Shown piece after piece: positions 4,585 to 64,000 of a DNA stretch of 64,000 nucleotides. Each line of letters starts with the position of its first letter. The first letter of the stretch is position 1. The stretch covers positions 204,740 through 268,739 of IMG/VR virus record IMGVR_UViG_3300032296_003307; one strand, given 5' to 3'. The notes under the pieces are model-generated. The model searched no databases. It was not told the origin of the DNA and saw only the letters and a program-made list of their open reading frames with translations. The translations under genes and the position numbers were made by a program.

Positions 4585-4585
4585 T

Positions 4586-4657: not shown

Positions 4658-4662
4658 CAAAA

Positions 4663-5149: not shown

Positions 5150-5233
5150 CAAGATGAGTTTCCCTACACCTTTGGGTTAGTAACTAGTTAAAGGGGGACA
5201 AAAGTGGTATACAAGTCCACGACTCATCCACTT

Positions 5234-5310: not shown

Positions 5311-5354
5311 CAAAATTTTTTCAATATGTCAAAAACTTTTCTTATCTTTGTAAT

Positions 5355-41432: not shown

Positions 41433-42233
41433 TTATACTTGAGGTTCATATTTTATGCCTCTATCGTCTGTAAAATAAAATTCTTTCTTAGATGTTTCAA
41501 TCCAAAATTTAACTTCATTTTCAGTCATGGGTTGAGTTCCGTTTTTGTAGTTCCAAAAAATACTACCCTCTCTCATGTTCAAGTGTTTGTACCCAAACTT
41601 AGGTATTGTCATAATACGTAAAGAATGATATGTCATTCTCAAGAAGAATTCATATCCAAAAGTCAATTTTACACTAGGCTTTAGTTTTCCGAATTCGACA
41701 AATTTATTTTTTTTCATAACCGCACCTGAGATTTGAAAGTTTTGATAACTTTGTAAAATATCATTAGACAATATCCCTATTTCCTGTGCAAAATTAGCCG
41801 CAAATGTGGCTTCATTTGTAAAACCAGCAAAAGTACCTTTTGTATCTACGTCAATTACGATAGGTAAAAAAATGTCAGTTTGTTCGTAGAAATTGTAATA
41901 TTTTTCTACATTGTCCAACCAAATTGGTGATAATTCGTCATCAAATTCTAAAATAGTAAACCACTCTGAGTTGCAATTTTCGACACCAAAATTAACTTGA
42001 GAACAAAAATTAGGTTCATCAGAATACTCTAATAGGTTTACCGTTAAACCTGAATAATCAAATGATTTTAATTTTTCAATTAATGGTTCTTCTTTAGTAT
42101 GTACAATTACTAACTCTTTAGGTTGTTTTCTTTGTTGTAAAACCGAGTTAACACAACTTTGTAAATAATCATCAAAACCTTTGGTTAATGCGGATTTTAT
42201 GGGTAGTATAACTGAAATATCTATATTTTTCAT
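41433..42233 (-). CDS. Glycosyltransferase, GT2 family
   Basis: ISVILPI...SVLQQ...ELVIV...NFGV...ILEFDD. Confidence 0.8.
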   Translation of the reverse strand: MKNIDISVILPIKSALTKGFDDYLQSCVNSVLQQRKQPKELVIVHTKEEPLIEKLKSFDYSGLTVNLLEYSDEPNFCSQVNFGVENCNSEWFTILEFDDELSPIWLDNVEKYYNFYEQTDIFLPIVIDVDTKGTFAGFTNEATFAANFAQEIGILSNDILQSYQNFQISGAVMKKNKFVEFGKLKPSVKLTFGYEFFLRMTYHSLRIMTIPKFGYKHLNMREGSIFWNYKNGTQPMTENEVKFWIETSKKEFYFTDDRGIKYEPQV

Positions 42234-42237
42234 AATC

Positions 42238-43296
42238 TTAGTTTGTTTCTTTAATTCTGTTTAATTGTTCTTGGAAATTATTAAGTCTTGCGTCAAAAAT
42301 ATTCATAAAACAATCTAATACTTTTTCCTCAAAAACATTTTTATCCGAAAATTTATTTGCGGTTTCTTTTCCGTCTTGAATTAGTTTCGGTGAAATATTA
42401 TCCTCCAACCAATTTAGGGTAAAATCTGCAATTACGTCTGTAAAATTTATTGGGTTGTCTATCCACACTCCATTCTCTTCGGTCATCCAGTCATGTTTCA
42501 AATAAGGTATTTTACCAATTACAGGAACTCCAACTTTCATACTTTCCAAAGGAAATGAGCCCCAAGTACTTGTTGGGTCAATCCAAACAGACAAGAATGA
42601 TTCTTTGATAGAAGTGGCGAAATCTTGTTCAGATAAACCTCTTAAATCTCTAAAAGTAATCCATCTATACTGAGGAAATTTTAAATAAAACTCTTTAATC
42701 AAGTTTATTGCATCTCTTTGGTCTCTTGAGTGTACACCAATTATTGGTTTTGCGGGAACCACCTGCTCTTCAAATTTATCTGAAATCAAAGGTTCAATAA
42801 TGTCGTAAGAAACATTTCTCATTACCTTAGATATTTGTGACTTAGCACTTTCACTTGTGGTAATACATTTTAAGAAACCAAAATCAGGCCAAGTGGCACC
42901 TGGTTGTAATGTTTCTAAAACATGGTCGTAAGCCTGAGCAATCACTATTTTACCACAAGGTAGGTTTTTTACCTGTTCCATTACGAAACCAAATATTTCG
43001 GGTAGAACTAACAAATCTTCAGGTGCCACTGACAAATTACCCCCCTCAATTGGTTGATGAGGTAAGTCATCATATTTAGCGTCTAACCAAGAAGACACAG
43101 GTGTGTAGTCAGGTTTTTCAGTCAACATTATTGCGTTGTAACCGTTGTTTTTTAATGTAAGTGCAAAATCATAAATGTATCTTATTGATGCCTTTGCGTT
43201 ACCTTTTGTTTCTTGAACGAAGAAATAAATCCTTGCGTTTTTATTTACGATTTGTTCAATTGATTTTTCTAACTTTAAAACTAATTCGTTTTCCAT
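42238..43296 (-). CDS. Glycosyltransferase, GT-B fold
   Basis: DLLVLPE and WGSFPLESMKVGVPVIG (GT4-like nucleotide-binding motif). Confidence 0.75.
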   Translation of the reverse strand: MENELVLKLEKSIEQIVNKNARIYFFVQETKGNAKASIRYIYDFALTLKNNGYNAIMLTEKPDYTPVSSWLDAKYDDLPHQPIEGGNLSVAPEDLLVLPEIFGFVMEQVKNLPCGKIVIAQAYDHVLETLQPGATWPDFGFLKCITTSESAKSQISKVMRNVSYDIIEPLISDKFEEQVVPAKPIIGVHSRDQRDAINLIKEFYLKFPQYRWITFRDLRGLSEQDFATSIKESFLSVWIDPTSTWGSFPLESMKVGVPVIGKIPYLKHDWMTEENGVWIDNPINFTDVIADFTLNWLEDNISPKLIQDGKETANKFSDKNVFEEKVLDCFMNIFDARLNNFQEQLNRIKETN

Positions 43297-43297
43297 A

Positions 43298-43570
43298 TTA
43301 TAAACTTTGTATCATTTTGTGTTTAAGAAGTGTGTTCCAAGCAATTCTGAATGGGATTGTTAAGTTATTAGATGCTCTTGACCCCAACATTTCGTCCGTC
43401 TCTTCTTGTTCTGTAAGAACAATCTCCATCATCATTTTTACCAATTCATATCTTACGATGGAAATACTTTGTTCTGTTTCACCTGTTGTAGGCTCTTTCG
43501 ATTCAATATTCAAATACTCGTTGATATTGTTTAAATCGAAATAATAATTTTCACCCATTAACTGTATCAT
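43298..43570 (-). CDS. Hypothetical protein
   Basis: 90 aa within the operon. Confidence 0.65.
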   Translation of the reverse strand: MIQLMGENYYFDLNNINEYLNIESKEPTTGETEQSISIVRYELVKMMMEIVLTEQEETDEMLGSRASNNLTIPFRIAWNTLLKHKMIQSL

Positions 43571-44156
43571 GTTCTGTTATTTTTTCTAAAATAATATCTA
43601 ATTCCTTAAAATTAGAAATAGTAAATTCGGTATCAATGTCTTTATTATAGACCATATCATATTTAATCATGGTTTTCCCATGATTATTTTGTAATAAATT
43701 TGGATTTGTAGTTACAATAACATCCATTTCAGACCAAACTTCATTTTCATTAAATTTGTTTATGAATATTATTTTATCACACTGACACGCAAATTTTGAG
43801 ATAAAAAATAATGTTGCGGGTTTCGCTTTACCGATGTCATCTGAAAACAAAATGAATCTATGTTTTTCTTTGTATTTTTGATAGATTTCGTCATAATCAT
43901 AAAAAGTTGACATTTCAGTCGATGGGGCGTGACCAAATATCTGCATTACAAATTCTTCATATAAAAAACTATAAAATTCTTCGTCGTCTTTGAAGTTGAA
44001 ATGATTACCGAATTCAAATGATGTTACAGGTAAATTCATCTCATAAACAAACTCAGGTTCTTCACCCATTTCATCAATTAAGTATTTTTGATAAACTTGT
44101 TCTATTTTGGCAACAACGTCCCTTAGAACCCCATTTATTTCTATTGCGATGTTCAT
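43551..44156 (-). CDS. HAD/NT5C-like 5'-nucleotidase homologue with a degenerate motif I
   Basis: MNIAIEINGVLRD (canonical IxIDxDGVLxD) and C-terminal YN motif. Confidence 0.6.
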   Translation of the reverse strand: MNIAIEINGVLRDVVAKIEQVYQKYLIDEMGEEPEFVYEMNLPVTSFEFGNHFNFKDDEEFYSFLYEEFVMQIFGHAPSTEMSTFYDYDEIYQKYKEKHRFILFSDDIGKAKPATLFFISKFACQCDKIIFINKFNENEVWSEMDVIVTTNPNLLQNNHGKTMIKYDMVYNKDIDTEFTISNFKELDIILEKITEHDTVNG

Positions 44157-44878
44157 TCTTCGTATCTTTTAAGAATTTTAGTTATAAGAGGATTTCTTAC
44201 AATATCTTTTTCATTAAATTCAAAGACACCTATATCATCCATATCTTTAAATTTATTTATTGCATCCCATAAACCTGATTGAGTTTTATCTTTGTACCTA
44301 TCCGTCTGTTCCAAATCTCCTGAAATAAAAAATTTACTATTAAAACCAATCCTTGTTAACAATAATTTCATTTGATTAGGTGTACTATTCTGACCTTCTT
44401 CAAAAATCAAAATTGTGTTATCTATGTTCCAACCTCTTATGTATGCCAACGCTTGAACTTCTATAAAATCAGATTGTATTAATCTTTCTCGTGTTTCTTT
44501 ACCTATTAATTTATTTAAAAGATAATACGAGGGACTGATGTATGGGTCTAATTTTTCTTCTAACGAACCGGGTAACGAACCTAACTTTTCTTCCGCTTCA
44601 ACCGCAGGTCGTACAATCATTAATTTTTCATAAGGACTGTTTGGGTCTGATAATAAATCTACAGCGGCTTTCATGGCTATGTATGATTTTCCTACACCGG
44701 CGGGACCAGAACAAATAGTGATTTGATTCTTTCTAAGAATATCATAATAAATTTTTTGATTTTCTGTTAAGAATTTTTCTTTTGTTTGTTTTTTTAGAAT
44801 TGTGACTAAAAGTTCTTTTTTATTTTTTTGTGATAATTCTTGTACAATCGGAGTTGTTACTTTTTTCTTTTTTTCCAT
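44153..44878 (-). CDS. phoH: PhoH family ATPase
   Basis: GPAGVGKS, RPAVE..EKLGSLPG, AYIRG, EEGQN, LTRIG, GDLEQ and DIVRN motifs. Confidence 0.95.
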   Translation of the reverse strand: MEKKKKVTTPIVQELSQKNKKELLVTILKKQTKEKFLTENQKIYYDILRKNQITICSGPAGVGKSYIAMKAAVDLLSDPNSPYEKLMIVRPAVEAEEKLGSLPGSLEEKLDPYISPSYYLLNKLIGKETRERLIQSDFIEVQALAYIRGWNIDNTILIFEEGQNSTPNQMKLLLTRIGFNSKFFISGDLEQTDRYKDKTQSGLWDAINKFKDMDDIGVFEFNEKDIVRNPLITKILKRYEE

Positions 44879-44879
44879 T

Positions 44880-45875
44880 TTAGTTAGTTATTATTTTATT
44901 TTGATTTTGATTATAAAATTCAAACCAATAATCAATCATTTCATTCAACATCGTTTCAAAGTTGTACTTGGGTTCCCACCCTGTATGGTTTTTTAATTTT
45001 TCAGGACTACCTTTTAAATTGTTTAGTTCTTCCGGTCTTAAAAATTTTTCATCAATTACTACATAATCTTGATAAGATAAATTAAGTCTGTGGAACACGT
45101 ATTCGCACAAATCTCGAACGGTATGTGAAACGCCCGTTGCACAAACATAATCGTCAGGAGATTCTAATTGTAGTATCATCCACATCGCTTCAACATAATC
45201 TTTAGCGTGACCCCAATCACGACTGGCATCTAAATTACCTAACGCTAATTTATTTGACAATCCTAATTTTATCTTAACGGCTTCTTTCACCACTTTATTA
45301 GTAACAAAATTAGTTCCTCTCCTTGGCGATTCGTGGTTAAAAAGAATGCCGTTCGATATGAACATGTCGTAAGAATTTCTATAGTTTCTTGATATGTTAT
45401 ATGAAAATACTTTTGCACATCCATATGGAGATACTGGGTTCATCTGTGTTGTTTCTCTTTGGAACCCGTCAGGGTCTATAGAGTTTCCAAACATTTCAGA
45501 TGATGATGCTTGGTATATTTTTGTGTTGGGTTTTATTAATCTTACCGCCTCTAAAAGATTTAATGTTCCTAAACCAGTTACGTTTGCGGTGTATATGGGT
45601 TGGTCAAAAGATATTCTAACGTGTGACTGAGCAGCCAAATTATATATTTCATCTGGTTGTGTTTTTTTGATTACTGTCATTAATGATGAAAGGTCAGTCA
45701 TATCCGCATAAAATAATTTAACATCATCGTAAACATTTCCAAGTCTTGCTGTTTGATTCTCTGCAACTGAATTTCTTTTTAAAGTACCAAAAACTTCGTA
45801 ATTTTTTTCTAATAATAATTCGGCCAAATAAGAACCGTCTTGTCCATTAATGCCGGTAATCAAAGCTTTTTTCAT
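44880..45875 (-). CDS. gmd: GDP-mannose 4,6-dehydratase
   Basis: ALITGINGQDGSYLAE, YNLAAQSHV, QASSSE, SPYGCAK, NHESPRRG and RDWGHA. Confidence 0.95.
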   Translation of the reverse strand: MKKALITGINGQDGSYLAELLLEKNYEVFGTLKRNSVAENQTARLGNVYDDVKLFYADMTDLSSLMTVIKKTQPDEIYNLAAQSHVRISFDQPIYTANVTGLGTLNLLEAVRLIKPNTKIYQASSSEMFGNSIDPDGFQRETTQMNPVSPYGCAKVFSYNISRNYRNSYDMFISNGILFNHESPRRGTNFVTNKVVKEAVKIKLGLSNKLALGNLDASRDWGHAKDYVEAMWMILQLESPDDYVCATGVSHTVRDLCEYVFHRLNLSYQDYVVIDEKFLRPEELNNLKGSPEKLKNHTGWEPKYNFETMLNEMIDYWFEFYNQNQNKIITN

Positions 45876-47023
45876 ATTGTTTCGTTCACTATTTCTATTA
45901 TGTAATCTAATTCACCTTTAGTCATTTGGTGGTTATTTGGTAGATAAAGACCATATTTATGAACCTTAAACGCCTTTGGCAATTCTTGTTTATCGTACCT
46001 TTCAAACCAAAATGGGTGTTCGTTTATTGAACCACATATCAAAGGTCTACACTCGACACCCTTAACATTTAGGTTATGAACCAATAACTCTAATTTACTT
46101 GTTATTATTGGATAAGAAAAATTAGATATAAATGTATTTTCACTTGGTTTAATTTTCCATTCATGATTTATGATACCCTCATGATAAATTTTATAATTTT
46201 TATTCCTGTTACTCACTATAGAATCTAACTTTTTTAGTTGTTCTAATCCAATAAATGCTTGTAAATCTGTTGCTCTTAGATTAAATCCCGGATAATAAAA
46301 TGTGTACAAAGAACGAAAATCAGAAATTTTATATTTGTTTCTTAATTCTTCTTGTTTTTGTTTTGGTAAATCTCTGTCCCACCCATGAGAACGAATTGAT
46401 AAAAGTATATGGTATAACTCCTCGTCATCTGTAGATATCATACCACCTTCAATTGTTGACATATGATGACCAAAATAAAAAGAAAATGTGGACATGTCCC
46501 CAAACGTACCTAATTTTTTTTCCTCATATTCAGAACCAATCGATTCACAAGTATCTTCAATAAGTTTAATATCGTGTTTTACACACAAATCAACTATTTC
46601 TTTCATGTGGTTTGGAAAACCTAAAACATGAACTAAAATAATACTGGAAGGGTTGTGTTGTTCTATTATTTTTTTTAAGTGTTCAATATCTAAACCCAAG
46701 TTATCTTCATCACATTCGCACATTATTGGTTCTAACCCAAGTTGTATTGCTGGTGTTACTGTGGTTACCCAAGAAACTGAAGGAACAACAATTTTTTTAT
46801 TTCTTAATTTACCTGAGATAAGTAATGCGTATACAGATGCTAAATTTGCCGAAGAGCCTGAGTTTACAAAAACCGAGAATTTTCTACCTAACCATTCAGA
46901 CCATTTTTTTTCAAACTCTACAGTTAAATCACCTTTTGTTAATTTTGGGTTATGTTGCAACCATTCAATCAACTTGGATATGTCCTGATTGTCTATTGTG
47001 TCTTTAACCAATTTTATATTCAT
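45872..47023 (-). CDS. PLP-dependent DegT-family enzyme of the ColD/E1 3-dehydratase type
   Basis: VNSGSSAN, EDTCES and SFYFGHHMSTIEGG, with His at the position where aminotransferases have the Schiff-base Lys. Confidence 0.8.
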   Translation of the reverse strand: MNIKLVKDTIDNQDISKLIEWLQHNPKLTKGDLTVEFEKKWSEWLGRKFSVFVNSGSSANLASVYALLISGKLRNKKIVVPSVSWVTTVTPAIQLGLEPIMCECDEDNLGLDIEHLKKIIEQHNPSSIILVHVLGFPNHMKEIVDLCVKHDIKLIEDTCESIGSEYEEKKLGTFGDMSTFSFYFGHHMSTIEGGMISTDDEELYHILLSIRSHGWDRDLPKQKQEELRNKYKISDFRSLYTFYYPGFNLRATDLQAFIGLEQLKKLDSIVSNRNKNYKIYHEGIINHEWKIKPSENTFISNFSYPIITSKLELLVHNLNVKGVECRPLICGSINEHPFWFERYDKQELPKAFKVHKYGLYLPNNHQMTKGELDYIIEIVNETI

Positions 47024-47798
47024 AGATGTCTTTTTTTGTTAGGTTTAAAAGCTCATTATAATCAGATGTTTTTATACAAGAATAATAACTATTACGTTTG
47101 TTTAATAAATTGTTAGAGTCGTCATACTCCAAATATTCTTCGATATTTTTTCCTGTTTGTGTGTATAAATCTACAATAAATTGTTTTACATTATATAATT
47201 CTCCGCTTCCGATAATTAGGTCTGATTCTGCACTTATAGATTTTTCTACAACAATTTTTGGGTGTATCAAGTCCCTTTCAAAGTCGATGTTACCTATTTT
47301 TATTTTTTGATTAAGTATTAATGAGTCAAATATTTTCTTAAATAGAAACCCGTCTTTTCTAAATGGTGAATTGAAATTAAACGGATATATTATTACAACG
47401 TTATTGTAATCTTTTTTATTTTTGTTTATTTCGTTGCACATCATTTCTTTGGATTTTATGTATGGAGTCTCAAAATAATTGTAAGGTGTTTCTAAATTTA
47501 TACACCCGTCATGTTTGTTCCATAATTCCGATGTTGAATAAACAACTATTTTTCTGCAAAAATCTTTCAATCTGTTTATAACATCTAAAGTATATGATAC
47601 GTTAACTTGAAAAAACAAAGAATCATTATCCTTTAAAAAAGTTCTTTGTTCGGCAAACAATAAAAAAATCTTATCGTATTTTTTTTTCTGTATTTTTTCA
47701 AAATCTAAATTTCTTGATGAAATAAAATCAAAATTATTTTTTGGAAAGTACGTTGAAAGTTGTGATGTGTTACCAATCACTAAGTTTTGATTGGTCAT
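47004..47798 (-). CDS. NAD-dependent epimerase/reductase (extended SDR)
   Basis: Degenerate GxxSQL Rossmann motif, STSE, PYIKSK (YxxxK) and RDLIH. Confidence 0.7.
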   Translation of the reverse strand: MTNQNLVIGNTSQLSTYFPKNNFDFISSRNLDFEKIQKKKYDKIFLLFAEQRTFLKDNDSLFFQVNVSYTLDVINRLKDFCRKIVVYSTSELWNKHDGCINLETPYNYFETPYIKSKEMMCNEINKNKKDYNNVVIIYPFNFNSPFRKDGFLFKKIFDSLILNQKIKIGNIDFERDLIHPKIVVEKSISAESDLIIGSGELYNVKQFIVDLYTQTGKNIEEYLEYDDSNNLLNKRNSYYSCIKTSDYNELLNLTKKDIYEYKIG

Positions 47799-48397: not shown

Positions 48398-48440
48398 ATA
48401 AAATAATTTAATTAAAAATCAAAAATTATCAATCTAAGAA

Positions 48441-49454: not shown

Positions 49455-49455
49455 A

Positions 49456-49932: not shown

Positions 49933-49933
49933 A

Positions 49934-50722: not shown

Positions 50723-50723
50723 C

Positions 50724-51512: not shown

Positions 51513-51515
51513 AAC

Positions 51516-52325: not shown

Positions 52326-52330
52326 AAAAA

Positions 52331-53761: not shown

Positions 53762-53764
53762 ATT

Positions 53765-56992: not shown

Positions 56993-57041
56993 CTTATTCT
57001 TTTCAGAAAAAGATACAAAAAATTACGTAAAAATCAAAAGA

Positions 57042-57632: not shown

Positions 57633-57644
57633 ATTACTATATTA

Positions 57645-58025
57645 TCAAAATTTACTATTAATTATAACACGATTCATGCTTTTGTCACCATTAAAATTGT
57701 ATCCTGGTCTTGGAGTGTTAAATTTTTCTGTTGTTGGTTTAAACGACATTATTTTATCTAATCTAAATAATCTCCAAGAAGGTAAAGGTAAAACACCTAA
57801 GTACGCTTTGTGAGACGAGCCTTCATAGTCCCAAGCTCTTAAAACCAAGTTATTCGCCTTAGAATACCCTAAACATACAGGTTCTATTAAACGCAGACCT
57901 TTACCGCCAGGTTCGTCCCCGTCATAATAGATTACCGTGATATCTTTGTTTTTTATTGCTTTTTGAACGTCATTCAAATTAGCAACCTCCAACAGAATAC
58001 CTTTTAAGGTGTTTGTTAATTTCAT
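57645..58025 (-). CDS. Stand-alone WYL-domain protein
   Basis: AI.....V.IYY......G.R.IEP..LG......LRAW......WRLFRLDKI. Confidence 0.75.
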   Translation of the reverse strand: MKLTNTLKGILLEVANLNDVQKAIKNKDITVIYYDGDEPGGKGLRLIEPVCLGYSKANNLVLRAWDYEGSSHKAYLGVLPLPSWRLFRLDKIMSFKPTTEKFNTPRPGYNFNGDKSMNRVIINSKF

Positions 58026-58315
58026 TAAAAATCGGGATACCTTTTATTCTTATTGTATTTGTTTATTTTTATTTCAAGTTTTCTTTCAACTACATCTATA
58101 CTAGTACCCGCATCTTCATTGAAGATATCTAAAAATACTCCTGTACCCCTACCCAAAGTATCTCCATCGGCAATTGCGTCAGGTGAAGTAACTGAGTATT
58201 CGTCTGCTTTAGGCGTGTAGTCGTTTTTAACTTGGTTTACAACTCTTTGTCTGTCAGCAATTGCGGTTAACAAGTTAGTTGGTTGTGAATAATCTAAAGG
58301 GATTAAAGTTGCCAT
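58025..58315 (-). CDS. Hypothetical protein
   Basis: 96 aa, overlapping both neighbours. Confidence 0.65.
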   Translation of the reverse strand: MATLIPLDYSQPTNLLTAIADRQRVVNQVKNDYTPKADEYSVTSPDAIADGDTLGRGTGVFLDIFNEDAGTSIDVVERKLEIKINKYNKNKRYPDF

Positions 58316-58779
58316 AAATTTTCCATTAATTGATTTATCCTTTTGAGGCTGTTTAGTGCTTGCTCATTCATGTGTTTATCAACACCTGATTTGTGCGATT
58401 TTGATGGGGAATTGTTCATGTTTGATAATTGAGGTGAATAGTCTCTGTCCATTTGCATTCCCGTTTCTCTTTTGTTTCTGTCGGTCATTTCTAAACCTCT
58501 ACGAGCACCTGATAAGATAGATTCAACAAATTGTTTCATTTTAAGACCCCCATTTAAATTAAATTCAGGTCCATTTTGGTCACCTTTAAAAGAATCGAAA
58601 AAATTTTTAATTCTTTTTGCTTGTTGATATGTCATAGAGGTAGACCCTTGTAATTGTCTATTTCTTTCAAACCCGTCCTTACCTTGACCCGCAGCGCCGT
58701 GTTGTCGATACATATCTATAAGATGTTTTCTAACATCTTCAGGCATTTCGAATTTTTGACCATATAAATTACTATTCAT
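58303..58779 (-). CDS. Hypothetical protein
   Basis: 158 aa. Confidence 0.7.
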   Translation of the reverse strand: MNSNLYGQKFEMPEDVRKHLIDMYRQHGAAGQGKDGFERNRQLQGSTSMTYQQAKRIKNFFDSFKGDQNGPEFNLNGGLKMKQFVESILSGARRGLEMTDRNKRETGMQMDRDYSPQLSNMNNSPSKSHKSGVDKHMNEQALNSLKRINQLMENLWQL

Positions 58780-59620
58780 TCTTTAATAACATCATTAAAT
58801 CTCTAACAGACAAACCTTCCTTATTTGCCATTTTTTTCAACGCTTTAATATTCCTTCTTAACATAGAACTCGCGTCAATATCTTTTTTAGATATTTCGTG
58901 GTCATCCGTTTTTTTATGTAACAAATCTTCAATCATCTTCATCATCTTTTGTTTTTGTATTTCTGATAAAGTTGCTTTTGTTACAAAATTTTTATCTTTA
59001 TAATATTTTGAGCTTTTATCTCTTTTACCTGAAGGGTCTTTACCAAACTGTTTTGTTCTGTTATACGCCTCTTCGGGTTCCATTTCCATCTTATCTTTTA
59101 AGTACTTAAATGTTTCTTTTCCGTCTAATTCTTCGGTTTCTTCATATCCAAAGGCGTCCGAATAATCAACTTCTTGGATTGTTGGTTCGTCTTCTGTTGA
59201 TTCTCCATAATACACACGATAAGTTCCTGTGTATGGTGGTTTTGGCGTTCTTGTCGCTCTTACTGTTTGGTCCATAGTTTTTCTCGGATGCATTGACATA
59301 TCTAAAATTGGTGTAGAAGAGTCACTCATGGTTCCGTCAAAATCAATTAACTCTGAAACTTCTCCATTTTTTTTACTAACACGTGTAATAATTTTTTTCA
59401 AATCATCTATTGTGTATTTTTTGTCTTTTTGTTTACCCAAGTTAGAAACAACTTTTTTTAATTCCTTTTGATTTTTTTTAGGAACAGAAATTTTTTCGTC
59501 TTTTTTTCTTGCTTCAGAAAGTGTTCTTTGTACTGAAAAATAGACATCAATAGTATTTGCATTCTCCTTTAAGAAGAAGTAATACGGTTCAGCATAATAT
59601 TCTTTATTAAGTTCTATCAT
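58772..59620 (-). CDS. Hypothetical protein
   Basis: 282 aa; TATTTAT on the minus strand at 59638-59632. Confidence 0.7.
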   Translation of the reverse strand: MIELNKEYYAEPYYFFLKENANTIDVYFSVQRTLSEARKKDEKISVPKKNQKELKKVVSNLGKQKDKKYTIDDLKKIITRVSKKNGEVSELIDFDGTMSDSSTPILDMSMHPRKTMDQTVRATRTPKPPYTGTYRVYYGESTEDEPTIQEVDYSDAFGYEETEELDGKETFKYLKDKMEMEPEEAYNRTKQFGKDPSGKRDKSSKYYKDKNFVTKATLSEIQKQKMMKMIEDLLHKKTDDHEISKKDIDASSMLRRNIKALKKMANKEGLSVRDLMMLLKNE

Positions 59621-59663
59621 AATTACTAACTATAAATACATCATTAAAGGTATTTATTTTATA

Positions 59664-62291
59664 ATGGCTTATCAAAACATCAATCAATACGTCTATAACA
59701 AGTGGTATTTATTGGGAGTATACACTGGTGATGACATCTCCTTAGCGTCCGACGAAAGAAATTACAACGAAGAAGTTGTTTTTTCTACCGACATTATAGG
59801 CGTTGATGATGGTAATCTTCTACCAATAAATATCAACTTTAACAGTACTGCAAATACTCAGACTTTTGATATTTCTTATAATTCATACAACTTTAACAAT
59901 ATTATAGTCTCGTCCAATTATTGGACGCCTGAAAATTTTGACCCGAATTGTATAACAGCACAAACAATTTGTGACATTGGTTTGACAGGCACTGATAACG
60001 GTTTGGTTACCGGAATGACAGGTCAATCCATTACTATAACAAATGGGGTATTGACCGGCTCATCAAAATTTAATAGATATACTTTTGGTAGACAAATGAA
60101 GTTTCACCAAGTTACAGGATATACTGCAAGTCCAAACGTTAGATTTTCAGGTGTTCCTTCAGGTGCGACATATGCGATTGTAACAAAATCAGCCAGTACA
60201 ATAGGGACTTATCAAGAATTTTATGGTGGTTTTTATCAAGGTTTTTATTCTTTATTTGGATACGAATATGACGTATTACCATACAGACAACATAGAGGTT
60301 GGACTGTTGAAATGTTGTTAAAGCCGAGATTATCTGATGAATATTCTCCGCCGTCAGGATATGCAACTTTAAACGGATTTTATCCGCAAAACAAAAATAT
60401 TTTCTTTTACTTAGGAACTAGAGCGGAAAACAAATATTGGCATCACGCTGACGGAACAAATTCTGGTGATACAGGTTACACAAGAGTAACTTCGGGTCTA
60501 ACAACTCTTCTTACTTGTGCTTGTGCAGACACGGGAGTTACCAACTCAAGCTGTATTCATGTATACCCCCCAACAGGATATACAACCGCACATACCACTT
60601 GTGATTGTGTGTGTACTTGTGGGTATTGTAACACACTTGTTCCCGAACCCGAAGACGACCCGTTATACGATTCAATGTCAAACGCTCTTGCGTTGAGATT
60701 GAGTGGTGACCCAGGAAACCCACATATATGTGTTAGGGTACTTAGGATGACAGGTGATTGTGTAACCACCGGTACTTGTGTCACAGGTGAAACTTCTTTA
60801 ACAGGTTATACGTTTGAGGAATTTTGTTCTTCTAAAGGAATATACGATTACTGTACAGGAACGACTTATTTAGAACAGGAACACTGGTTTCAGGTAGACG
60901 CCGTTTTTGAAAGAAAATATTGGTTTGACGAATGTGATTTATATTATAGGGGTGGTTTAGGAACGATTACATCATATCCTTTTTCCGCAACTGTTGTAAA
61001 TCAAACACTATCGTTAATCCAACCACCAACAACACATGAGAATATTGTCCCCCCAAAATTAGAAATTGTTGAATTAAATAATATGTGGTTACTTGAAAAG
61101 GACTACAGAAAAGGTACATTTAAAATTTACGTAAATGGAATGCACATTTTTTCTATTGAGGATTTTGAGGAAATCATACCTAGAGGATTATCAACAAGAA
61201 AAGAAAGACAAGTAGGTGTTCCTTTTAATATATCAATTGGGGGAGGAACACAAGGTCTACACGATAATTTAGTATTCAGTGGTTTACCCACAGGAATTAC
61301 AAACAACTATATTCAAGACCCTGAGTTATTTCCTGACAATATTCTTAGTGCCACTACCTTGAGTGGTCTTAACACTAATATTTTAATTGAAAAATATTTT
61401 GCGGGAAATTTTGAGGGGGGTATTTCTCAGTTTAGGTTTTACAACAAACCTTTATCTGTACCTGAAATACAACACAATTACAGAATATTAAATACTGACT
61501 ACGAATTATTTAATGAGTTCTGTCCAACTTGCCCACCAGTTCCAACACCTACACCAACCCCAACTGTAACTCAAACCCAAACTTCAACTCCAACACCAAC
61601 ACCTACCGAAACTGTAACACCAACAGTAACTCAGACACCGACAACAACACCAACGCCTTCAGTTACACCGGGAATTACACCTACAATGACATCGTCACCA
61701 ACACCAACACCGTCTTCAACTCCTGTGTTCGATTTCGGATACTTGTTCATAGAACCACAATCAGGTTCAACAAATATTGGTCAATACTTGTACGATTTGG
61801 GTCTAAACTTCTTCGGATTTACAAACTTGTCATCTCCAGATACTTCTGATGCATCTCAATTTAACATAGATATGAATAGATATGTTGACTTCAGTGGTTG
61901 GACTTCAGGACTGTTCCCATCTGTAAGAAGTCAGTTTATACCTCAAACATCAGGTGGTGTTGATGGATATGGAAATGCAATAGTTGCTTACAACTTCACA
62001 ACACACGAAGTTCCTGCTAACACAGTAATCGGTCCTGCTTGGTTTATTTGGATACTTCCTGTTGATTCAACTAATAACCAAATCCAAACCATGATTGATT
62101 ACAATAACAGTGGTAATCCAAATGATTTGACTGGCGTTAATACCGAAGGAACATTAAGAGCAAATACATTTACATACTCAGGTAGTACAATACCGCCTGA
62201 TACATATAGAGTTTACACAACATTTACTGACGTTGCGTTCTATCTAAACAATACCGATGATATTTATTTCAAAGGAAACTCAGTTTCATAA
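59664..62291 (+). CDS. Large beta-rich putative virion protein (LamG/ConA-like features, Cys cluster, PT-repeat linker)
   Basis: WTVEMLLK, KIYVNG and FEGGISQFRFYNKPLS.PEI..NY are LamG-like; a (PT)n tract precedes the C-terminal domain. Confidence 0.65.
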   Translation: MAYQNINQYVYNKWYLLGVYTGDDISLASDERNYNEEVVFSTDIIGVDDGNLLPININFNSTANTQTFDISYNSYNFNNIIVSSNYWTPENFDPNCITAQTICDIGLTGTDNGLVTGMTGQSITITNGVLTGSSKFNRYTFGRQMKFHQVTGYTASPNVRFSGVPSGATYAIVTKSASTIGTYQEFYGGFYQGFYSLFGYEYDVLPYRQHRGWTVEMLLKPRLSDEYSPPSGYATLNGFYPQNKNIFFYLGTRAENKYWHHADGTNSGDTGYTRVTSGLTTLLTCACADTGVTNSSCIHVYPPTGYTTAHTTCDCVCTCGYCNTLVPEPEDDPLYDSMSNALALRLSGDPGNPHICVRVLRMTGDCVTTGTCVTGETSLTGYTFEEFCSSKGIYDYCTGTTYLEQEHWFQVDAVFERKYWFDECDLYYRGGLGTITSYPFSATVVNQTLSLIQPPTTHENIVPPKLEIVELNNMWLLEKDYRKGTFKIYVNGMHIFSIEDFEEIIPRGLSTRKERQVGVPFNISIGGGTQGLHDNLVFSGLPTGITNNYIQDPELFPDNILSATTLSGLNTNILIEKYFAGNFEGGISQFRFYNKPLSVPEIQHNYRILNTDYELFNEFCPTCPPVPTPTPTPTVTQTQTSTPTPTPTETVTPTVTQTPTTTPTPSVTPGITPTMTSSPTPTPSSTPVFDFGYLFIEPQSGSTNIGQYLYDLGLNFFGFTNLSSPDTSDASQFNIDMNRYVDFSGWTSGLFPSVRSQFIPQTSGGVDGYGNAIVAYNFTTHEVPANTVIGPAWFIWILPVDSTNNQIQTMIDYNNSGNPNDLTGVNTEGTLRANTFTYSGSTIPPDTYRVYTTFTDVAFYLNNTDDIYFKGNSVS

Positions 62292-62302
62292 GTAATAGTA
62301 TA

Positions 62303-64000
62303 ATGAGTAATTTACCATATAAGAATCCGTTAACCGCACTTCAGTTAAACAGTCAACAATCAATACCAAGAAACGTAAATAGAGGTGTATCTTTTTCCGT
62401 GCTCAATACGGGTGGATATATGGAAGTGTACACTCTTGGTGATTTAATATGGAATTACTCGGGTGAAACTCTTCAAACAATTACCGGTTCAACAATACCA
62501 ATAGATTTTTATAAAGGGGGAAACACAGCATTTCAACCCGATGTGTTAACTCTTAACTCGGACAACATATCTACAGGTCGTAGAAAATTGGGTATGTTAG
62601 CATATGTTTATGAAACGGATTTAATATATCAGTTTCACATTGACAATTATGATGCGTTATGGAGTGGTGCCACAGGAGCGACAGGTGTAGGTGGTCCAAC
62701 TGTGATTCAAAATCAATTTGGAACTACGGTTAAAAATAATTCTGTTGCGGGTCAAAATTTTATTAATGCATGGACCGCATCTACTATTGAAGGTGTTGGG
62801 GGAGTGTCAAGAAGTAATGCAAGGTGGAGAGTATTTAGCGGGTCACTTGCGGTAATAACAGGTGGAACGGTTAGTGGTGGAACCACACTTATTTTAGATA
62901 CTAACTACGGTACTCAAATAGAAGTAACAGGATTTACTTCAGGTACTACTGTAACGGGTGGCACATATGACTATACCACAGGAAATTTAACATTAGACAA
63001 TTCTAACGGTACATTTGAAATAATTTCGGGTGTGACCGGTGTTTTAATAACAGGAGGCACATATTTTAGCGGGACCTCCACATTAGATTTGTTTGATTCA
63101 ACAGGAGGCACCATATCAATAACAGGTGTTACCGCAGGTACTTCAGGTACTTCAGGCACTTCGGGTACAAGTGGTACTTCGGGTACTTCCGGTACAAGCG
63201 GTACTTCAGGCACTTCGGGTACAAGTGGTACTTCGGGTACAAGTGGCACTTCAGGAAGTTCAGGAACAAGTGGGTCTTCGGGAAGTTCAGGTTCAAGTGG
63301 TACTGATGGTAGCTCAGGTACTTCAGGAACTAGCGGAACAAGCGGCACAAGCGGTTCTTCAGGAAGTTCAGGAACAAGCGGTTCTTCAGGAAGTTCAGGA
63401 ACAAGTGGTACTTCGGGAAGTTCGGGTTCTTCGGGATTGAGTGGTGTTGATGGAACTTCAGGTACATCAGGTTCAAGCGGAACTAGCGGAACAAGTGGTA
63501 TAAGTGGTTCTTCGGGAAGTTCAGGTACTAGTGGTTCTTCAGGCTCTTCCGGAACTAGCGGAACATCGGGAACTAGCGGAACAAGCGGCACAAGTGGTTC
63601 TTCAGGAAGTTCAGGAACAAGTGGTTCTTCAGGAAGTTCAGGTTCATCAGGAACATCAGGGACTAGCGGAACATCAGGTTCATCAGGAACATCAGGAACT
63701 AGCGGAACATCAGGTTCTTCAGGTACTAGTGGTTCTTCAGGTACTAGTGGTTCATCAGGCACTAGTGGTTCATCAGGCACTAGTGGTTCTTCAGGAAGTT
63801 CAGGTTCATCAGGAACATCAGGTTCTTCAGGCTCAAGCGGTACTAGTGGTACATCGGGAACTAGCGGAACAAGTGGTACAAGCGGCACATCAGGTTCTTC
63901 AGGGAGTTCAGGTTCTTCAGGTTCAAGTGGTACTAGCGGAACAAGCGGCACTTCAGGAACAAGTGGCACATCAGGTTCTTCAGGAAGTTCAGGTTCTTCA
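62303..64000 (+). CDS. Putative fibre protein with Gly-(Ser/Thr)-Ser triplet repeats (3'-truncated)
   Basis: Frame reads open from ATG 62303 (MSNLPYKNP...) to the window end. It is absent from the ORF track because it has no stop in the window. Confidence 0.85.
   Translation, partial: MSNLPYKNPLTALQLNSQQSIPRNVNRGVSFSVLNTGGYMEVYTLGDLIWNYSGETLQTITGSTIPIDFYKGGNTAFQPDVLTLNSDNISTGRRKLGMLAYVYETDLIYQFHIDNYDALWSGATGATGVGGPTVIQNQFGTTVKNNSVAGQNFINAWTASTIEGVGGVSRSNARWRVFSGSLAVITGGTVSGGTTLILDTNYGTQIEVTGFTSGTTVTGGTYDYTTGNLTLDNSNGTFEIISGVTGVLITGGTYFSGTSTLDLFDSTGGTISITGVTAGTSGTSGTSGTSGTSGTSGTSGTSGTSGTSGTSGTSGTSGSSGTSGSSGSSGSSGTDGSSGTSGTSGTSGTSGSSGSSGTSGSSGSSGTSGTSGSSGSSGLSGVDGTSGTSGSSGTSGTSGISGSSGSSGTSGSSGSSGTSGTSGTSGTSGTSGSSGSSGTSGSSGSSGSSGTSGTSGTSGSSGTSGTSGTSGSSGTSGSSGTSGSSGTSGSSGTSGSSGSSGSSGTSGSSGSSGTSGTSGTSGTSGTSGTSGSSGSSGSSGSSGTSGTSGTSGTSGTSGSSGSSGSS
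63137..64000 (+). repeat. 9-nt-period coding repeat (GTS/GSS)n
   Basis: About 95 consecutive Gly-X-Y triplets with varied synonymous codons. Confidence 0.95.

What the first reader, a model, noticed from the sequence alone, without database searches (positions are those of the whole stretch)
41433..64000. Glycosylation cluster plus Ser/Thr-rich putative surface proteins: a possibly glycan-coated virion
Seen: about eight putative glycosyltransferases of several folds with sugar-modifying enzymes (41433-56992), and three proteins with long Ser/Thr tracts (18342-19358, 59664-62291, 62303 onward). No flippase, polymerase or lipid-carrier transferase is evident in the window. Inference: the acceptors are soluble, most simply phage fibres or capsid as in giant viruses. 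DNA hypermodification or host-surface remodelling are alternatives.
Basis: inference. Interest (0 to 1): 0.6.

Follow-up and report, generated by a model that had tools for sequence, protein, structure and literature searches.

The report
Jumbo phage's own variable glycosylation island
A widespread freshwater jumbo phage encodes its own sugar-building toolkit (at least seven soluble glycosyltransferases and a rare deoxysugar pathway) beside mucin-like and collagen-like fibre proteins, so it may coat its own particle in sugars as giant viruses do, but the acceptor is not shown.

Summary
Window 41433-56992 lies in one long minus-strand operon. It encodes seven supported glycosyltransferases (three GT-B, four GT-A) and one further lead. 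It also encodes a Gmd/ColD/short-SDR route to a GDP-3,6-dideoxyhexose (colitose-like), an FkbM methyltransferase, a WlbA/WbpB-like 3-dehydrogenase and a hexapeptide acyltransferase.

The three Ser/Thr-rich proteins are real but of two kinds: Pro-Thr tracts (18342-19358, 59664-62291) and a proline-free G-[ST]-[ST] collagen-like fibre (62303 onward).

The window is the end of a 268.7-kb freshwater jumbo phage. Its whole genome has no initiating phosphoglycosyl transferase, flippase, polymerase or ligase, and no protein with more than four hydrophobic segments.

New context:
- The cluster has a conserved frame in 25 or more relatives, around a hypervariable island.
- One island enzyme is a homologue of chlorovirus A075L, a capsid-glycan xylosyltransferase.
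- A second sugar cluster lies elsewhere in the genome.
- Pro-Thr tract proteins recur next to the capsid and fibre genes across the clade.

DNA glycosylation is unlikely: the only thymidylate-synthase-family gene is an ordinary ThyA.

Virion glycosylation is the best reading (about 0.45) but is untested. Remodelling of host surface glycans remains a serious rival.

The parts
41433..42233 (-). GT2-family glycosyltransferase (GT-A), conserved across the clade
   Evidence: Pfam PF00535, 30.3 bits against a cut-off of 23.3. Orthologues are 53-60% identical in 25 or more related loci.
42238..43296 (-). GT-B glycosyltransferase (GT1/GT4-like), conserved
   Evidence: Orthologue profile against PDB 8xsg: 1.4e-13. 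Atlas 0.98-0.99 to Glycos_transf_1 clusters. No Pfam hit by single sequence.
43298..44156 (-). Two conserved ORFs of unknown function (90 aa and 201 aa)
   Evidence: Orthologues occur in the relatives. No hit in Pfam, NCBIfam or PDB.
44153..44878 (-). PhoH-like ATPase embedded in the cluster
   Evidence: Pfam PF02562, 2.5e-62.
44880..45875 (-). GDP-mannose 4,6-dehydratase (Gmd)
   Evidence: PF16363 at 1.3e-117. TIGR01472 scores 395.6 bits, just under its 415 cut-off.
45872..47023 (-). ColD-like GDP-4-keto-6-deoxymannose 3-dehydratase
   Evidence: PDB 2gms/3gr9 (ColD) at 4e-71. The His-His motif aligns with the ColD active site, where aminotransferases have Lys.
47004..47798 (-). Short divergent SDR; candidate ColC-like epimerase/4-reductase
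   Evidence: Pfam Epimerase and GDP_Man_Dehyd over aa 36-229. The STSE and YxxxK motifs are present, and the N-terminal Gly-rich motif is degenerate. Function is inferred.
47795..48397 (-). FkbM-family methyltransferase (island gene)
   Evidence: PF05050 at 1.1e-10. Only weak (27-28% identical) matches in three of the related loci.
48441..49475 (-). GFO/WlbA/WbpB-like nucleotide-sugar 3-dehydrogenase (island gene)
   Evidence: PF01408 plus its C-terminal domains. NF040723, UDP-GlcNAc 3-dehydrogenase, at 1.7e-33. PDB 3q2i at 1.2e-36 and WbpB 3oa2 at 7.5e-17.
49456..49932 (-). Left-handed beta-helix (hexapeptide) acyltransferase (island gene)
   Evidence: PF00132 at 6.8e-30. NeuD/PglB/VioB subfamily at 5.4e-24.
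49934..50749 (-). GT114 (A075L-like) inverting GT-B glycosyltransferase
   Evidence: A three-sequence profile hits PDB 8q8i/8avq/8asa at 4.8e-28. D58 and the Arg of the NG...R..E.LY motif align with the catalytic Asp73 and Arg208 (PMC11571054).
50724..51512 (-). Unknown island ORF; weak lead to a GT-A nucleotide-sugar transferase
   Evidence: Atlas 0.94 to GT8, GT6 and Nucleotid_trans clusters, with only 129-136 shared features. No Pfam, PHROG or NCBIfam hit.
51516..52325 (-). GT15-like glycosyltransferase (island gene)
   Evidence: PF01793 at 8.5e-9, 35.7 bits against a cut-off of 25.
52331..53761 (-). Conserved GT2_5 glycosyltransferase with a poorly conserved C-terminal half; borders the variable island
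   Evidence: PF13712 at 1.1e-30. In the orthologue alignment only aa 1-217 are conserved.
53765..54490 (-). GT2_4/GT92-like glycosyltransferase, specific to this genome
   Evidence: PF13704 at 9.2e-14 and PF01697 at 1.7e-11. No counterpart in related loci.
54487..55781 (-). dUTPase and 3'-5' exonuclease, conserved framework genes that are not glycan enzymes
   Evidence: PF00692 at 9.4e-24 and PF10108 at 1.4e-12.
55778..56992 (-). Highly conserved GT-B (GT4-like) glycosyltransferase
   Evidence: phrog_7162 at 6.3e-45. At least 8000 relatives in metagenomes, and the 120 best listed are 64-100% identical. AF2 pLDDT 79; Foldseek matches to GlgM, PglA, MshA and BshA at E 7e-14 to 1e-9.
57042..59620 (-). 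Five small conserved ORFs at the head of the minus-strand operon, function unknown
   Evidence: Syntenic orthologues in L002, L007 and L022. No family hits for 57042-57632 or 58772-59620, the two of the five that were scanned.
59621..59663 (.). A 43-bp divergent control region with the genome's position-locked GTATTTAT motif facing both ways
59664..62291 (+). 875-aa protein: large N-terminal part, a 71-74-residue Pro-Thr tract (about aa 619-692), and a conserved 185-aa C-terminal beta domain. Candidate virion/fibre-associated acceptor.
   Evidence: Translation. The C-terminal domain, preceded by a Pro-Thr tract of 30-210 aa, is found just upstream of the fibre gene in about 70 related loci. 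AF2 pLDDT is about 89 for aa 690-875 only.
62303..64000 (+). Fibre protein: 270-aa N-terminal domain followed by at least 296 aa of proline-free G-[ST]-[ST] collagen-like repeat, cut by the contig end
   Evidence: Pfam Collagen at 3.8e-40. Tail-fibre PHROGs at 9e-36. Relatives carry runs of up to 2055 aa or more.
18342..19358 (+). 338-aa protein: small Cys-containing domains separated by two Pro-Thr tracts (153 tract residues)
   Evidence: It lies in the same plus-strand block as terminase, portal, prohead protease and the major capsid protein.
40687..41430 (-). Conserved 247-aa protein with faint sigma-70 similarity, last gene of the tightly packed block
   Evidence: TIGR02937 at 5.4e-4, below its cut-off. 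Orthologues are 58-76% identical.
3635..5311 (+). Part of the tRNA array, including tRNA-Thr(UGU) and tRNA-Pro(UGG), which match the preferred codons of the Pro-Thr tracts
   Evidence: ARAGORN. ACA is 60% of tract Thr codons against 45% elsewhere. CCA is 64% of tract Pro codons against 39% elsewhere.

Best explanation
The phage carries a self-contained, cytoplasmic glycan-assembly system.

Inferred steps:
- The phage starts from host GDP-mannose and UDP-sugars.
- It makes unusual donors: a GDP-3,6-dideoxyhexose through Gmd, ColD and a short SDR, plus 3-keto or acylated and O-methylated sugars.
- A set of soluble glycosyltransferases then builds an oligosaccharide. Four are conserved across the clade, and a strain-variable set sits in the island.
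- The most likely acceptors are the phage's own Thr/Ser-rich virion proteins: the Pro-Thr tracts of decoration or fibre-associated proteins, and the proline-free G-[ST]-[ST] collagen-like fibre. These would be modified before assembly, giving a strain-variable sugar coat.

Shown here: the enzymes, their solubility, the frame-plus-island anatomy, and the candidate acceptors.

Not shown: the donor chemistry beyond ColD, and above all the identity of the acceptor.
For: 1. Seven supported soluble glycosyltransferases and six sugar-modifying enzymes lie in one operon.
2. The whole genome lacks Bac_transf, WecA-type, Wzx and Wzy/ligase families, with positive controls. It has no protein with more than 4 hydrophobic segments, so it has nothing of its own to build or export a lipid-linked glycan.
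3. The frame is conserved in 25 or more relatives around an island of 4-12 genes. The island swaps GT11, GT10, GT6, GT25, GT31/Fringe and GT2 enzymes, FkbM methyltransferases, epimerases, dehydrogenases and HldE-like genes. This is the pattern of the clade-specific clusters that glycosylate Megavirinae fibrils (PMC10117803).
4. The island enzyme at 49934-50749 is a GT114 homologue of PBCV-1 A075L, which builds the capsid-protein glycan (PMC11571054).
5. Candidate acceptors are many and conserved in position. There are six Pro-Thr tract proteins with 416 Ser/Thr in tracts. A Pro-Thr tract gene follows the capsid gene directly in seven related loci. The architecture 'variable domain, Pro-Thr tract, conserved C-terminal domain' sits directly before the fibre gene in about 70 loci.
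6. The fibre collagen repeat has no proline. From my own knowledge, Thr glycosylation can replace hydroxyproline in stabilising a triple helix, as in Riftia cuticle collagen. BclA of Bacillus, a collagen-like surface filament, is O-glycosylated with rare deoxy-amino sugars (PMC7793302, PMC6222408).
7. The glyco operon and the operon for the Pro-Thr protein and fibre start back to back in a 43-bp gap, each behind the same motif.
8. Phage tRNA-Thr(UGU) and tRNA-Pro(UGG) match the codons favoured in the tracts.
9. Phage-encoded virion glycosylation has a precedent in mycobacteriophages, cited through PMC12619734; the original paper is not held in the library.
Against: - No result shows a sugar on any protein. 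None of the glycosyltransferases belongs to a family specific for protein acceptors: the nearest folds of 55778-56992 are generic GT4 enzymes that act on lipids, sugars or small molecules.
- Pro-Thr tracts work as plain linkers in many unglycosylated proteins.
- The Pro-Thr proteins were not shown to be virion components. There is no PHROG function, and the fold matches are weak, Z 5.3 or less.
- Soluble glycosyltransferases are also what one expects for enzymes acting on host undecaprenyl-linked intermediates.
- The operon also holds PhoH, dUTPase and an exonuclease, genes usually expressed before the late genes. The temporal class of the shared motif is unknown.
Confidence: 0.45

Rival explanations
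1. Host-envelope remodelling. The phage glycosyltransferases act at the inner face of the membrane on host undecaprenyl-linked O-antigen, capsule or protein-O-glycan precursors. The host's own initiating transferase, flippase and ligase finish the job. The infected cell then displays an altered surface, which could exclude superinfecting phages or stop progeny from sticking to debris.
For: - The enzyme families are the ones found in O-antigen and capsule loci: Gmd/ColD, WbpB-like, hexapeptide acyltransferase, and GT2, GT4, GT11 and GT25.
- Colitose is known from O-antigens (PMC7685785, found).
- The anatomy of a conserved frame around a variable centre is that of bacterial surface-polysaccharide loci.
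- Peripheral glycosyltransferases need no membrane segment.
- ColD-like genes also occur in T4-like cyanophages, 38% identical. From my own knowledge, 'LPS genes' in those phages have long been read this way.
Against: - The phage has no initiating transferase, flippase, polymerase, ligase or GtrA/GtrB-type membrane protein, so every membrane step would have to be borrowed.
- Known serotype-converting phages are temperate and carry membrane enzymes.
- About a tenth of the genome is an expensive investment for a lytic cycle.
- This reading does not explain the abundance and conserved placement of Pro-Thr tract and proline-free collagen-like proteins.
Confidence: 0.3
2. DNA hypermodification. The glycosyltransferases decorate modified bases of the phage genome to evade restriction, as in T-even phages and the systems described by Pyle et al. 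2024.
For: - dUTPase and an exonuclease sit inside the cluster.
- Phage glycosyltransferases with a GT-B fold include DNA glucosyltransferases.
- Distant homologues of 55778-56992 (about 26% identical, two copies per genome) occur in Phapecoctavirus and Campylobacter phages, where their function is unknown.
- The moraphage paper lists DNA glucosylation as one possibility (PMC12619734).
Against: - The only thymidylate-synthase-family gene is an equivalog-level ThyA (TIGR03284, 294 bits against a cut-off of 108), so there is no dCMP or dUMP hydroxymethylase.
- There is no C5-methyltransferase.
- No Tet/JBP hit was found, though that search's control did not ring.
- Seven to ten glycosyltransferases, deoxysugar pathways and O-methyltransferases are far more than any known DNA glycosylation system uses.
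- The best fold matches of 55778-56992 are GT4 enzymes, not T4 alpha- or beta-glucosyltransferase.
Confidence: 0.05
3. Another acceptor. The pathway makes a soluble or secreted glycoconjugate, such as a glycosylated small molecule or a cytoplasmic or released polysaccharide. Or it glycosylates host proteins as part of takeover.
For: - GT4-like folds include enzymes that act on small molecules, such as MshA, BshA, GlgM and the methylmannose polysaccharide synthase.
- FkbM and TylF methyltransferases and 3-dehydrase enzymes are also typical of natural-product sugar tailoring.
Against: - No aglycone or polyketide/NRPS genes were seen in the parts annotated.
- No exporter is present.
- The strain-level hypervariability points to a surface-exposed product under diversifying selection.
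Confidence: 0.12

Closest known systems
Autonomous glycosylation of giant viruses (Megavirinae fibrils; chlorovirus PBCV-1 capsid protein Vp54)
   Same: - Virus-encoded nucleotide-sugar pathways for rare bacterial-type sugars.
- Several soluble glycosyltransferases.
- Gene clusters that differ between clades or strains (PMC10117803).
- A direct GT114/A075L homologue in the island (PMC11571054).
- Collagen-like and fibre proteins as plausible carriers.
   Different: - This is a tailed bacteriophage with a gp23-like capsid protein and a bacterial host.
- The sugars differ: a 3,6-dideoxyhexose route through ColD.
- The putative acceptors are Pro-Thr tracts and proline-free G-[ST]-[ST] repeats, not GMC-oxidoreductase fibrils or Vp54 N-glycan sites.
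- Glycosylation of the virion is not demonstrated here.
Mycobacteriophage virion glycosylation (Freeman et al. 2023, as cited in PMC12619734)
   Same: Phage-encoded glycosyltransferases thought to act in the cytoplasm on phage structural proteins.
   Different: - Those phages carry a few glycosyltransferases and no sugar-nucleotide pathways (my own knowledge).
- There the glycans sit on C-terminal tails of the capsid and tail-tube subunits.
- Here the capsid protein has no such tail. The candidates are separate tract proteins and fibres, and the system is five to ten times larger with a hypervariable island.
Colitose branch of O-antigen synthesis (Gmd-ColD-ColC; E. coli O55/O111 type)
   Same: Gmd and a ColD-type PMP-dependent 3-dehydratase, with the His active site, in adjacent and overlapping genes. 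Relatives carry GT11 enzymes, the family that includes colitosyl- and fucosyltransferases (the family role is my own knowledge).
   Different: No clear ColC: the next gene is a short, divergent SDR. There is no Wzx/Wzy or initiating transferase. The carrier is unknown.
BclA-type collagen-like glycoprotein filaments of the Bacillus exosporium, and serine-rich-repeat adhesins
   Same: Repetitive Thr/Ser-rich surface filaments that are O-glycosylated inside the producing cell by soluble glycosyltransferases, with strain-variable rare sugars (PMC7793302, PMC6222408; the serine-rich-repeat proteins are from my own knowledge).
   Different: No sequence relation to those glycosyltransferases was tested or found. 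The repeat here is G-[ST]-[ST] without proline, not GPT.
'Moraphages', aquatic jumbo phages with predicted Bacteroidota hosts (PMC12619734)
   Same: - Aquatic jumbo genome.
- PhoH, dUTPase, exonuclease, a ClpA-like ATPase and a sigma-like factor among conserved genes.
- Four glycosyltransferase orthogroups in the core.
- An Hc1 histone-H1-like gene.
   Different: That paper leaves the role of the glycosyltransferases open. In the parts read here it does not describe the deoxysugar pathway, the variable island or the Thr-rich proteins.

Membership tests
Lipid-linked surface-polysaccharide pathway (Wzx/Wzy or ABC type) | Initiating phosphoglycosyl transferase (Bac_transf or WecA/MraY type) | tested here: not met
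   PF02397 and PF00953 have no match in the 268.7-kb genome. The controls rang in 10 and 12 of 14 genomes.
Lipid-linked surface-polysaccharide pathway (Wzx/Wzy or ABC type) | Flippase, polymerase or ligase (polytopic membrane proteins) | tested here: not met
   PF01943 and PF04932 are absent. No ORF has more than 4 hydrophobic segments. Host-encoded supply is not excluded.
GDP-colitose pathway | GDP-mannose 4,6-dehydratase | tested here: met
   PF16363 at 1.3e-117. TIGR01472 scores 395.6 bits, which is 19 bits under the equivalog cut-off.
GDP-colitose pathway | ColD 3-dehydratase with His in place of the Schiff-base Lys | tested here: met
   PDB ColD/WbdK at 4e-71 over 376 residues, with the HH motif aligned.
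GDP-colitose pathway | ColC bifunctional 5-epimerase/4-reductase | tested here: inconclusive
   The adjacent 264-aa SDR keeps STSE and YxxxK. It matches only the central part of the Gmd and epimerase models and has a degenerate nucleotide-binding motif.
CAZy GT114 (A075L) | Sequence homology over the GT-B core, with the catalytic Asp and the phosphate-binding Arg | tested here: met
   Profile E 4.8e-28 over 220 residues. D58 and the Arg of the conserved motif align with Asp73 and Arg208 (PMC11571054). Donor and acceptor were not tested.
Virus-encoded virion glycosylation (giant-virus or mycobacteriophage type) | Virus-encoded glycosyltransferases and sugar-nucleotide enzymes | tested here: met
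Virus-encoded virion glycosylation (giant-virus or mycobacteriophage type) | Glycan covalently attached to a virion protein | not testable with these tools
   This needs virion glycoproteomics or heterologous co-expression.
Glycosylated DNA hypermodification (T-even / hmC / hmU type) | dCMP or dUMP hydroxymethylase, or a TET/JBP oxidase with a C5-methyltransferase | tested here: not met
   The single thymidylate-synthase-family gene is an equivalog ThyA. There is no C5-methyltransferase. Tet_JBP gave no hit, but its control was silent, so that part is inconclusive.
Serotype-converting gtrABC-type phage modules | GtrA flippase and GtrB bactoprenol glycosyltransferase (membrane proteins) | tested here: not met
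   No polytopic membrane protein is present, and none of the GT2 proteins has a membrane segment.
Collagen triple-helix repeat proteins | Uninterrupted Gly-X-Y periodicity | tested here: met
   PF01391 at 3.8e-40. At least 296 residues of G-X-Y. X and Y are atypically almost only Ser/Thr, with no Pro codons. Trimer formation was not tested.
Moraphages (PMC12619734) | Phylogenetic placement by TerL, MCP and PolB with the published genomes | not tested
Only shared traits were checked: the Hc1 gene, PhoH, dUTPase and a ClpA-like ATPase.

The most novel reading that the evidence does not exclude
A cosmopolitan clade of freshwater jumbo phages builds its own strain-variable glycocalyx. Mucin-like Pro-Thr tract decoration proteins and proline-free G-[ST]-[ST] collagen-like fibres, the latter stabilised by Thr/Ser glycosylation instead of hydroxyproline, would be O-glycosylated in the host cytoplasm. 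The enzymes would be four conserved phage glycosyltransferases plus a hypervariable island that supplies 3,6-dideoxyhexoses and methylated or acylated sugars. This would be the bacteriophage counterpart of the glycosylated fibril layer of giant viruses, with an O-antigen-like 'serotype' locus carried by the virus itself.
Probability: 0.35. Interest if true: 0.8.

Novelty: new variant of a known kind. Interest (0 to 1): 0.58.

Why it matters
Glycosylation of a virion by the virus's own enzymes is established for giant viruses and for a few mycobacteriophages. It is not known as a large, variable, pathway-complete system in tailed phages of environmental bacteria.

This clade is abundant. It has more than 598 capsid-gene relatives in IMG/VR and at least 8000 copies of one glycosyltransferase in metagenomes. 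This exact island occurs in freshwater samples from nine or more studies.

If its particles carry strain-specific sugar coats, that would affect how phages stick to particles and hosts. It would also affect how they resist proteases and grazers, and how 'auxiliary' sugar genes in viromes should be read. Such genes are at present annotated as LPS or cell-wall genes.

Even if the acceptor turns out to be the host surface, two points are new at the annotation level:
- the frame-plus-island anatomy;
- the phage-borne ColD and E1-type 3-dehydrases.

The first point gives a concrete locus for typing these phages.

Tried and rejected
- **Near-DNA search of the cluster against cultured phages:** no match. 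The terminase and capsid proteins are only 25-47% identical to the closest records: uncultured huge phages, Flavobacterium phage immuto and Microcystis phage Mel-JY01.
- **Host hint from the island GFO gene in bacterial genomes:** only two hits, at 35-36% identity. Uninformative.
- **Single-sequence PDB searches:** nothing for 55778-56992 or 52331-53761, and nothing for the 43551-44156 profile.
- **AF2 of the whole 875-aa Pro-Thr protein:** aa 1-689 came out below pLDDT 50, and only the C-terminal domain is confident. Fold searches gave only weak galectin/ConA-like matches for aa 211-505 and beta-sandwich matches for aa 688-875, with Z 5.3 or less. This is below the level that means more than a common arrangement. 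BFVD returned only uncharacterised proteins of uncultured phages. A virion role for this protein is therefore not established.
- **Does the 5'-open 120-aa ORF at the contig start complete the collagen-like fibre?** No fibre of 71 relatives matches it. Left open.
- **T4 late-promoter motif TATAAATA:** not enriched, 13 sites against 9.1 expected.
- **The DegT-family gene as a perosamine-type aminotransferase:** considered and rejected, because the ColD match is far stronger and the Lys is replaced by His.
- **Not attempted:**
  - Complex prediction, because a disordered tract with an enzyme is outside what that test detects;
  - Read laying;
  - the large representative-protein search, which the claim did not need;
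  - correlating island type with fibre type across relatives, because the two loci are 5-15 kb apart and linkage would confound the result.
- No alternative genetic code was used.

Full report
**What the window is.** The 64-kb window is the last quarter (204740-268739) of a 268,739-bp IMG/VR virus record with 32.4% G+C and a CheckV completeness of 100%. It encodes:
- a large terminase, a portal, a T4-type prohead protease and a gp23-like major capsid protein;
- a 12-gene tRNA array;
- on the minus strand, a block of 31 tightly packed genes that holds the finding.

The phage is a distant T4-like jumbo myovirus. Its clade is very common: more than 598 capsid-gene relatives at 73-90% identity in IMG/VR. 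This very cluster is held almost word for word by freshwater, reservoir, lake, estuary and lagoon metagenomes of nine or more studies.

Several traits fit the recently named aquatic 'moraphages', whose predicted hosts are Bacteroidota (PMC12619734). These are an Hc1 histone-like gene, PhoH, dUTPase, a ClpA-like ATPase and several conserved glycosyltransferases. I could not test membership.

**Checking the observation: the enzymes.** Seven glycosyltransferases are supported between 41433 and 56992.
- Four are GT-A: 41433-42233 (GT2), 51516-52325 (GT15-like), 52331-53761 (Glyco_tranf_2_5) and 53765-54490 (GT2_4/GT92). All score above the Pfam cut-offs.
- Three are GT-B.
  - 42238-43296 has an orthologue profile that hits the 8xsg glucosyltransferase at 1.4e-13, with protein-atlas support.
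  - 49934-50749 is described below.
  - 55778-56992 hits phrog_7162 at 6e-45. Its AF2 model (pLDDT 79) is matched best by GT4 enzymes such as GlgM, PglA, MshA and BshA.
- 50724-51512 is only a lead to a GT-A enzyme.

- Gmd at 44880-45875 is followed, with overlapping stops and starts, by a DegT-family protein. This is not an aminotransferase. It is a ColD-type 3-dehydratase: 4e-71 to the E. coli ColD structures, with the His-His active site.
- Next comes a short SDR that keeps the catalytic Ser/Tyr/Lys motifs.
- Together these predict a GDP-3,6-dideoxyhexose, either colitose or an isomer. The last step is inferred.
- The island adds an FkbM methyltransferase, a WlbA/WbpB-like 3-dehydrogenase and a hexapeptide acyltransferase. 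No aminotransferase for that branch was found.

No nucleotidyltransferase exists in the genome, so the phage starts from host GDP-mannose and UDP-sugars.

**Checking the observation: the Ser/Thr-rich proteins.** They are real but of two kinds.
- 18342-19358 and 59664-62291 carry Pro-Thr tracts of the form TPTxTPT.
- 62303-64000 is a tail-fibre-like protein. Its distal part is a Gly-X-Y collagen repeat in which X and Y are almost only Ser or Thr, with no proline. The contig ends inside this repeat.
- Outside the window, the genome has three to four more Pro-Thr tract proteins at 132 and 163-172 kb.
- In total, 793 residues lie in such tracts, against 23-118 after shuffling within proteins.

**Absence of lipid-carrier machinery.** There is no Bac_transf, WecA/MraY-type, Wzx or Wzy/ligase family, and positive controls rang in most reference genomes. 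No protein has more than four hydrophobic segments. None of the cluster proteins has a membrane segment.

**Anatomy across relatives.** The ColD gene retrieved 49 viral loci, 24 of them at 65-78% identity. Mapping the window's proteins on them shows a conserved frame, in this order:
1. five small ORFs;
2. the GT4-like enzyme;
3. exonuclease;
4. dUTPase;
5. the GT2_5 enzyme;
6. a variable island of 4-12 genes;
7. the short SDR (in some relatives);
8. ColD;
9. Gmd;
10. 0-10 variable genes;
11. PhoH;
12. two small ORFs;
13. the GT-B enzyme;
14. the GT2 enzyme;
15. a faintly sigma-like protein.

In this phage the island is 47795-52325 plus 53765-54490. Its genes have no counterpart in the related loci, apart from 49934-50749 (about 31% identical in three of them) and weak 27-28% matches to the FkbM gene 47795-48397 in three others.

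Eighty-three non-redundant island proteins of relatives fall into 46 families. A Pfam scan of them finds:
- glycosyltransferases of families GT11 (6), GT2 (6), GT10, GT6, GT25 and Fringe/GT31;
- FkbM methyltransferases, epimerases and UDP-glucose/GDP-mannose dehydrogenases;
- HldE-like kinase/nucleotidyltransferase pairs.

So closely related phages carry different glycan-building sets in one conserved slot, as bacterial O-antigen loci and Megavirinae glycosylation clusters do (PMC10117803).

**A link to a viral capsid-glycan enzyme.** A profile of 49934-50749 and its two phage orthologues hits PBCV-1 A075L at 4.8e-28. The catalytic Asp and a phosphate-binding Arg align. A075L is the beta-xylosyltransferase that extends the fucose of the N-glycan on the chlorovirus major capsid protein, and it founded family GT114 (PMC11571054). 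In two relatives the orthologue lies next to the deoxy-fucose-like pathway genes. This is homology to a family, not proof of the acceptor.

**A second cluster.** Outside the window, at about 94-105 kb, lies a further set:
- a GT1-like protein and two GT2 proteins;
- a second DegT-family enzyme, closest to the E1 CDP-hexulose 3-dehydrase (9e-60);
- a split transketolase and an SDR;
- TylF-type and FkbM-type methyltransferases.

Roughly a tenth of the genome is devoted to glycans.

**Candidate acceptors across the clade.**
- In seven related loci, the gene directly after the capsid gene encodes a small Cys-containing domain followed by 50-600 residues of Pro-Thr tract. The tract proteins at 163-172 kb of this genome begin with a similar small domain.
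- In nearly all of about 70 loci found with the fibre's N-terminal domain, the gene directly before the fibre gene has the architecture 'variable N-terminal part, Pro-Thr tract of 30-210 residues, conserved 185-residue C-terminal domain'. This is the architecture of 59664-62291.
- The fibres share the N-terminal 180-270 residues and then diverge. Many carry proline-free G-[ST]-[ST] runs, up to 2,055 residues or more, and assemblies often break there.
- Phage tRNA-Thr(UGU) and tRNA-Pro(UGG) decode the codons that the tracts prefer: ACA 60% against 45% elsewhere, and CCA 64% against 39%. This suggests that these proteins are made in quantity.

**Regulation.** A motif, (A/G)TATTTAT, starts 11-13 nt before the start codon of 42 genes, the sum of the counts at those three offsets. 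Its core is 16-fold enriched in upstream gaps. It occurs on both sides of the 43-bp gap between the glyco operon and the operon for the Pro-Thr protein and fibre. It also occurs before 18342 and the prohead protease gene. Inside the glyco operon the gaps are 5 nt or less, except for three without the motif. The two operons thus probably share a control region and a promoter type, but the temporal class is unknown. The T4 late motif is not enriched.

**Weighing the explanations.**
- **DNA glycosylation** is unlikely. The only thymidylate-synthase-family gene is an ordinary ThyA. There is no C5-methyltransferase. The system is far larger than any known DNA glycosylation system.
- **Virion-protein glycosylation** explains most features. 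It accounts for soluble enzymes without any export machinery, the giant-virus-like variable cluster, the A075L homologue, and the wealth and conserved placement of Thr/Ser-rich proteins. It also accounts for a collagen-like fibre without proline: from my own knowledge, such a fibre should be a poor triple helix unless its Thr/Ser are glycosylated, as in Riftia collagen, and it resembles the glycosylated BclA filament (PMC7793302).
- **Remodelling of host surface glycans** explains the enzyme families and the locus anatomy equally well. It needs only that the host supply the membrane steps.

No result here shows a sugar on a protein, and I could not show that the tract proteins are virion components. 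I therefore put virion glycosylation at about 0.45, host-surface remodelling at about 0.30, another acceptor at about 0.12 and DNA at about 0.05.

**Novelty and verdict.** The kind of system, virus-encoded glycosylation, is known. This would be a new variant: a pathway-complete system carrying a hypervariable island in an abundant clade of tailed phages, with 3-dehydrase-based deoxysugars and mucin-like and collagen-like candidate acceptors. The only paper found on a probably related lineage notes conserved glycosyltransferases and leaves their role open (PMC12619734).

Its inference is plausible and somewhat strengthened, but unproven.

Noticed in passing
window 59621-59663, and upstream of 18342, 28602, 12892, 40298, 9283, 16949 and others; genome-wide: A position-locked motif, (A/G)TATTTAT, starts 11-13 nt before the start codon of 42 genes. 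The 7-mer occurs in 68 of 160 upstream gaps, 16 times over background. It may be a phage-specific promoter giving very short or no leaders, or a translation signal. Its temporal class is unknown.
   Followed up: partly
genome 94,275-104,903 (locus L212), outside the window: A second glycan cluster: a GT1-like protein, two GT2 proteins, an E1-like CDP-hexulose 3-dehydrase (PDB 3bcx 9e-60), a split transketolase, an SDR, and TylF and FkbM methyltransferases.
   Followed up: partly
window 3416-5311 and 7489-7641: Twelve tRNA genes: Glu, Thr(UGU), Leu, three Met/CAU, Gly(UCC), Gly(GCC), Asp, Ala, Pro(UGG) and Ile(UAU). The Thr and Pro species match the codons favoured in the Pro-Thr tracts.
   Followed up: partly
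window 31325-33208: The major capsid protein (627 aa) matches gp23-like capsid proteins in two pieces that cover only about half of it. This implies a large insertion of roughly 250 residues relative to T4-like relatives.
   Followed up: no
window 64000 / genome position 1-363 (L132): The contig ends inside the collagen-like repeat and begins with a 5'-open 120-aa ORF. The assembly probably broke in the repeat. Whether the two ends join could not be shown.
   Followed up: partly
genome 14,917-15,072 (L211): A 58-aa Hc1 histone-H1-like protein (PF07432, 1.8e-9). Among the 14 control genomes the family rang only in Bacteroides thetaiotaomicron. This is a hint of a Bacteroidota host and a trait reported for moraphages (PMC12619734).
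   Followed up: no
window 33518-34195: A very basic, Lys-rich 225-aa protein is encoded directly after the capsid gene, at the place where some relatives carry a Pro-Thr tract gene. It has no family hit.
   Followed up: no
window 21970-23469 and 12892-14298: The 499-aa protein just before the terminase gene has a CBM_5_12 carbohydrate-binding module (7e-6). The 468-aa protein at 12892 has an endolysin-like C-terminal part.
   Followed up: no
window 14300-16321: A two-AAA-domain ATP-dependent protease/ClpA-like gene on the minus strand (phrog_4871, 2e-236).
   Followed up: no
phage collection, e.g. NC_026927 at 162915-164069: ColD-like 3-dehydratase genes, about 38% identical, are present in 54 records of Synechococcus phage ACG-2014f, where they are annotated only as aminotransferase or hypothetical protein.
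   Followed up: no
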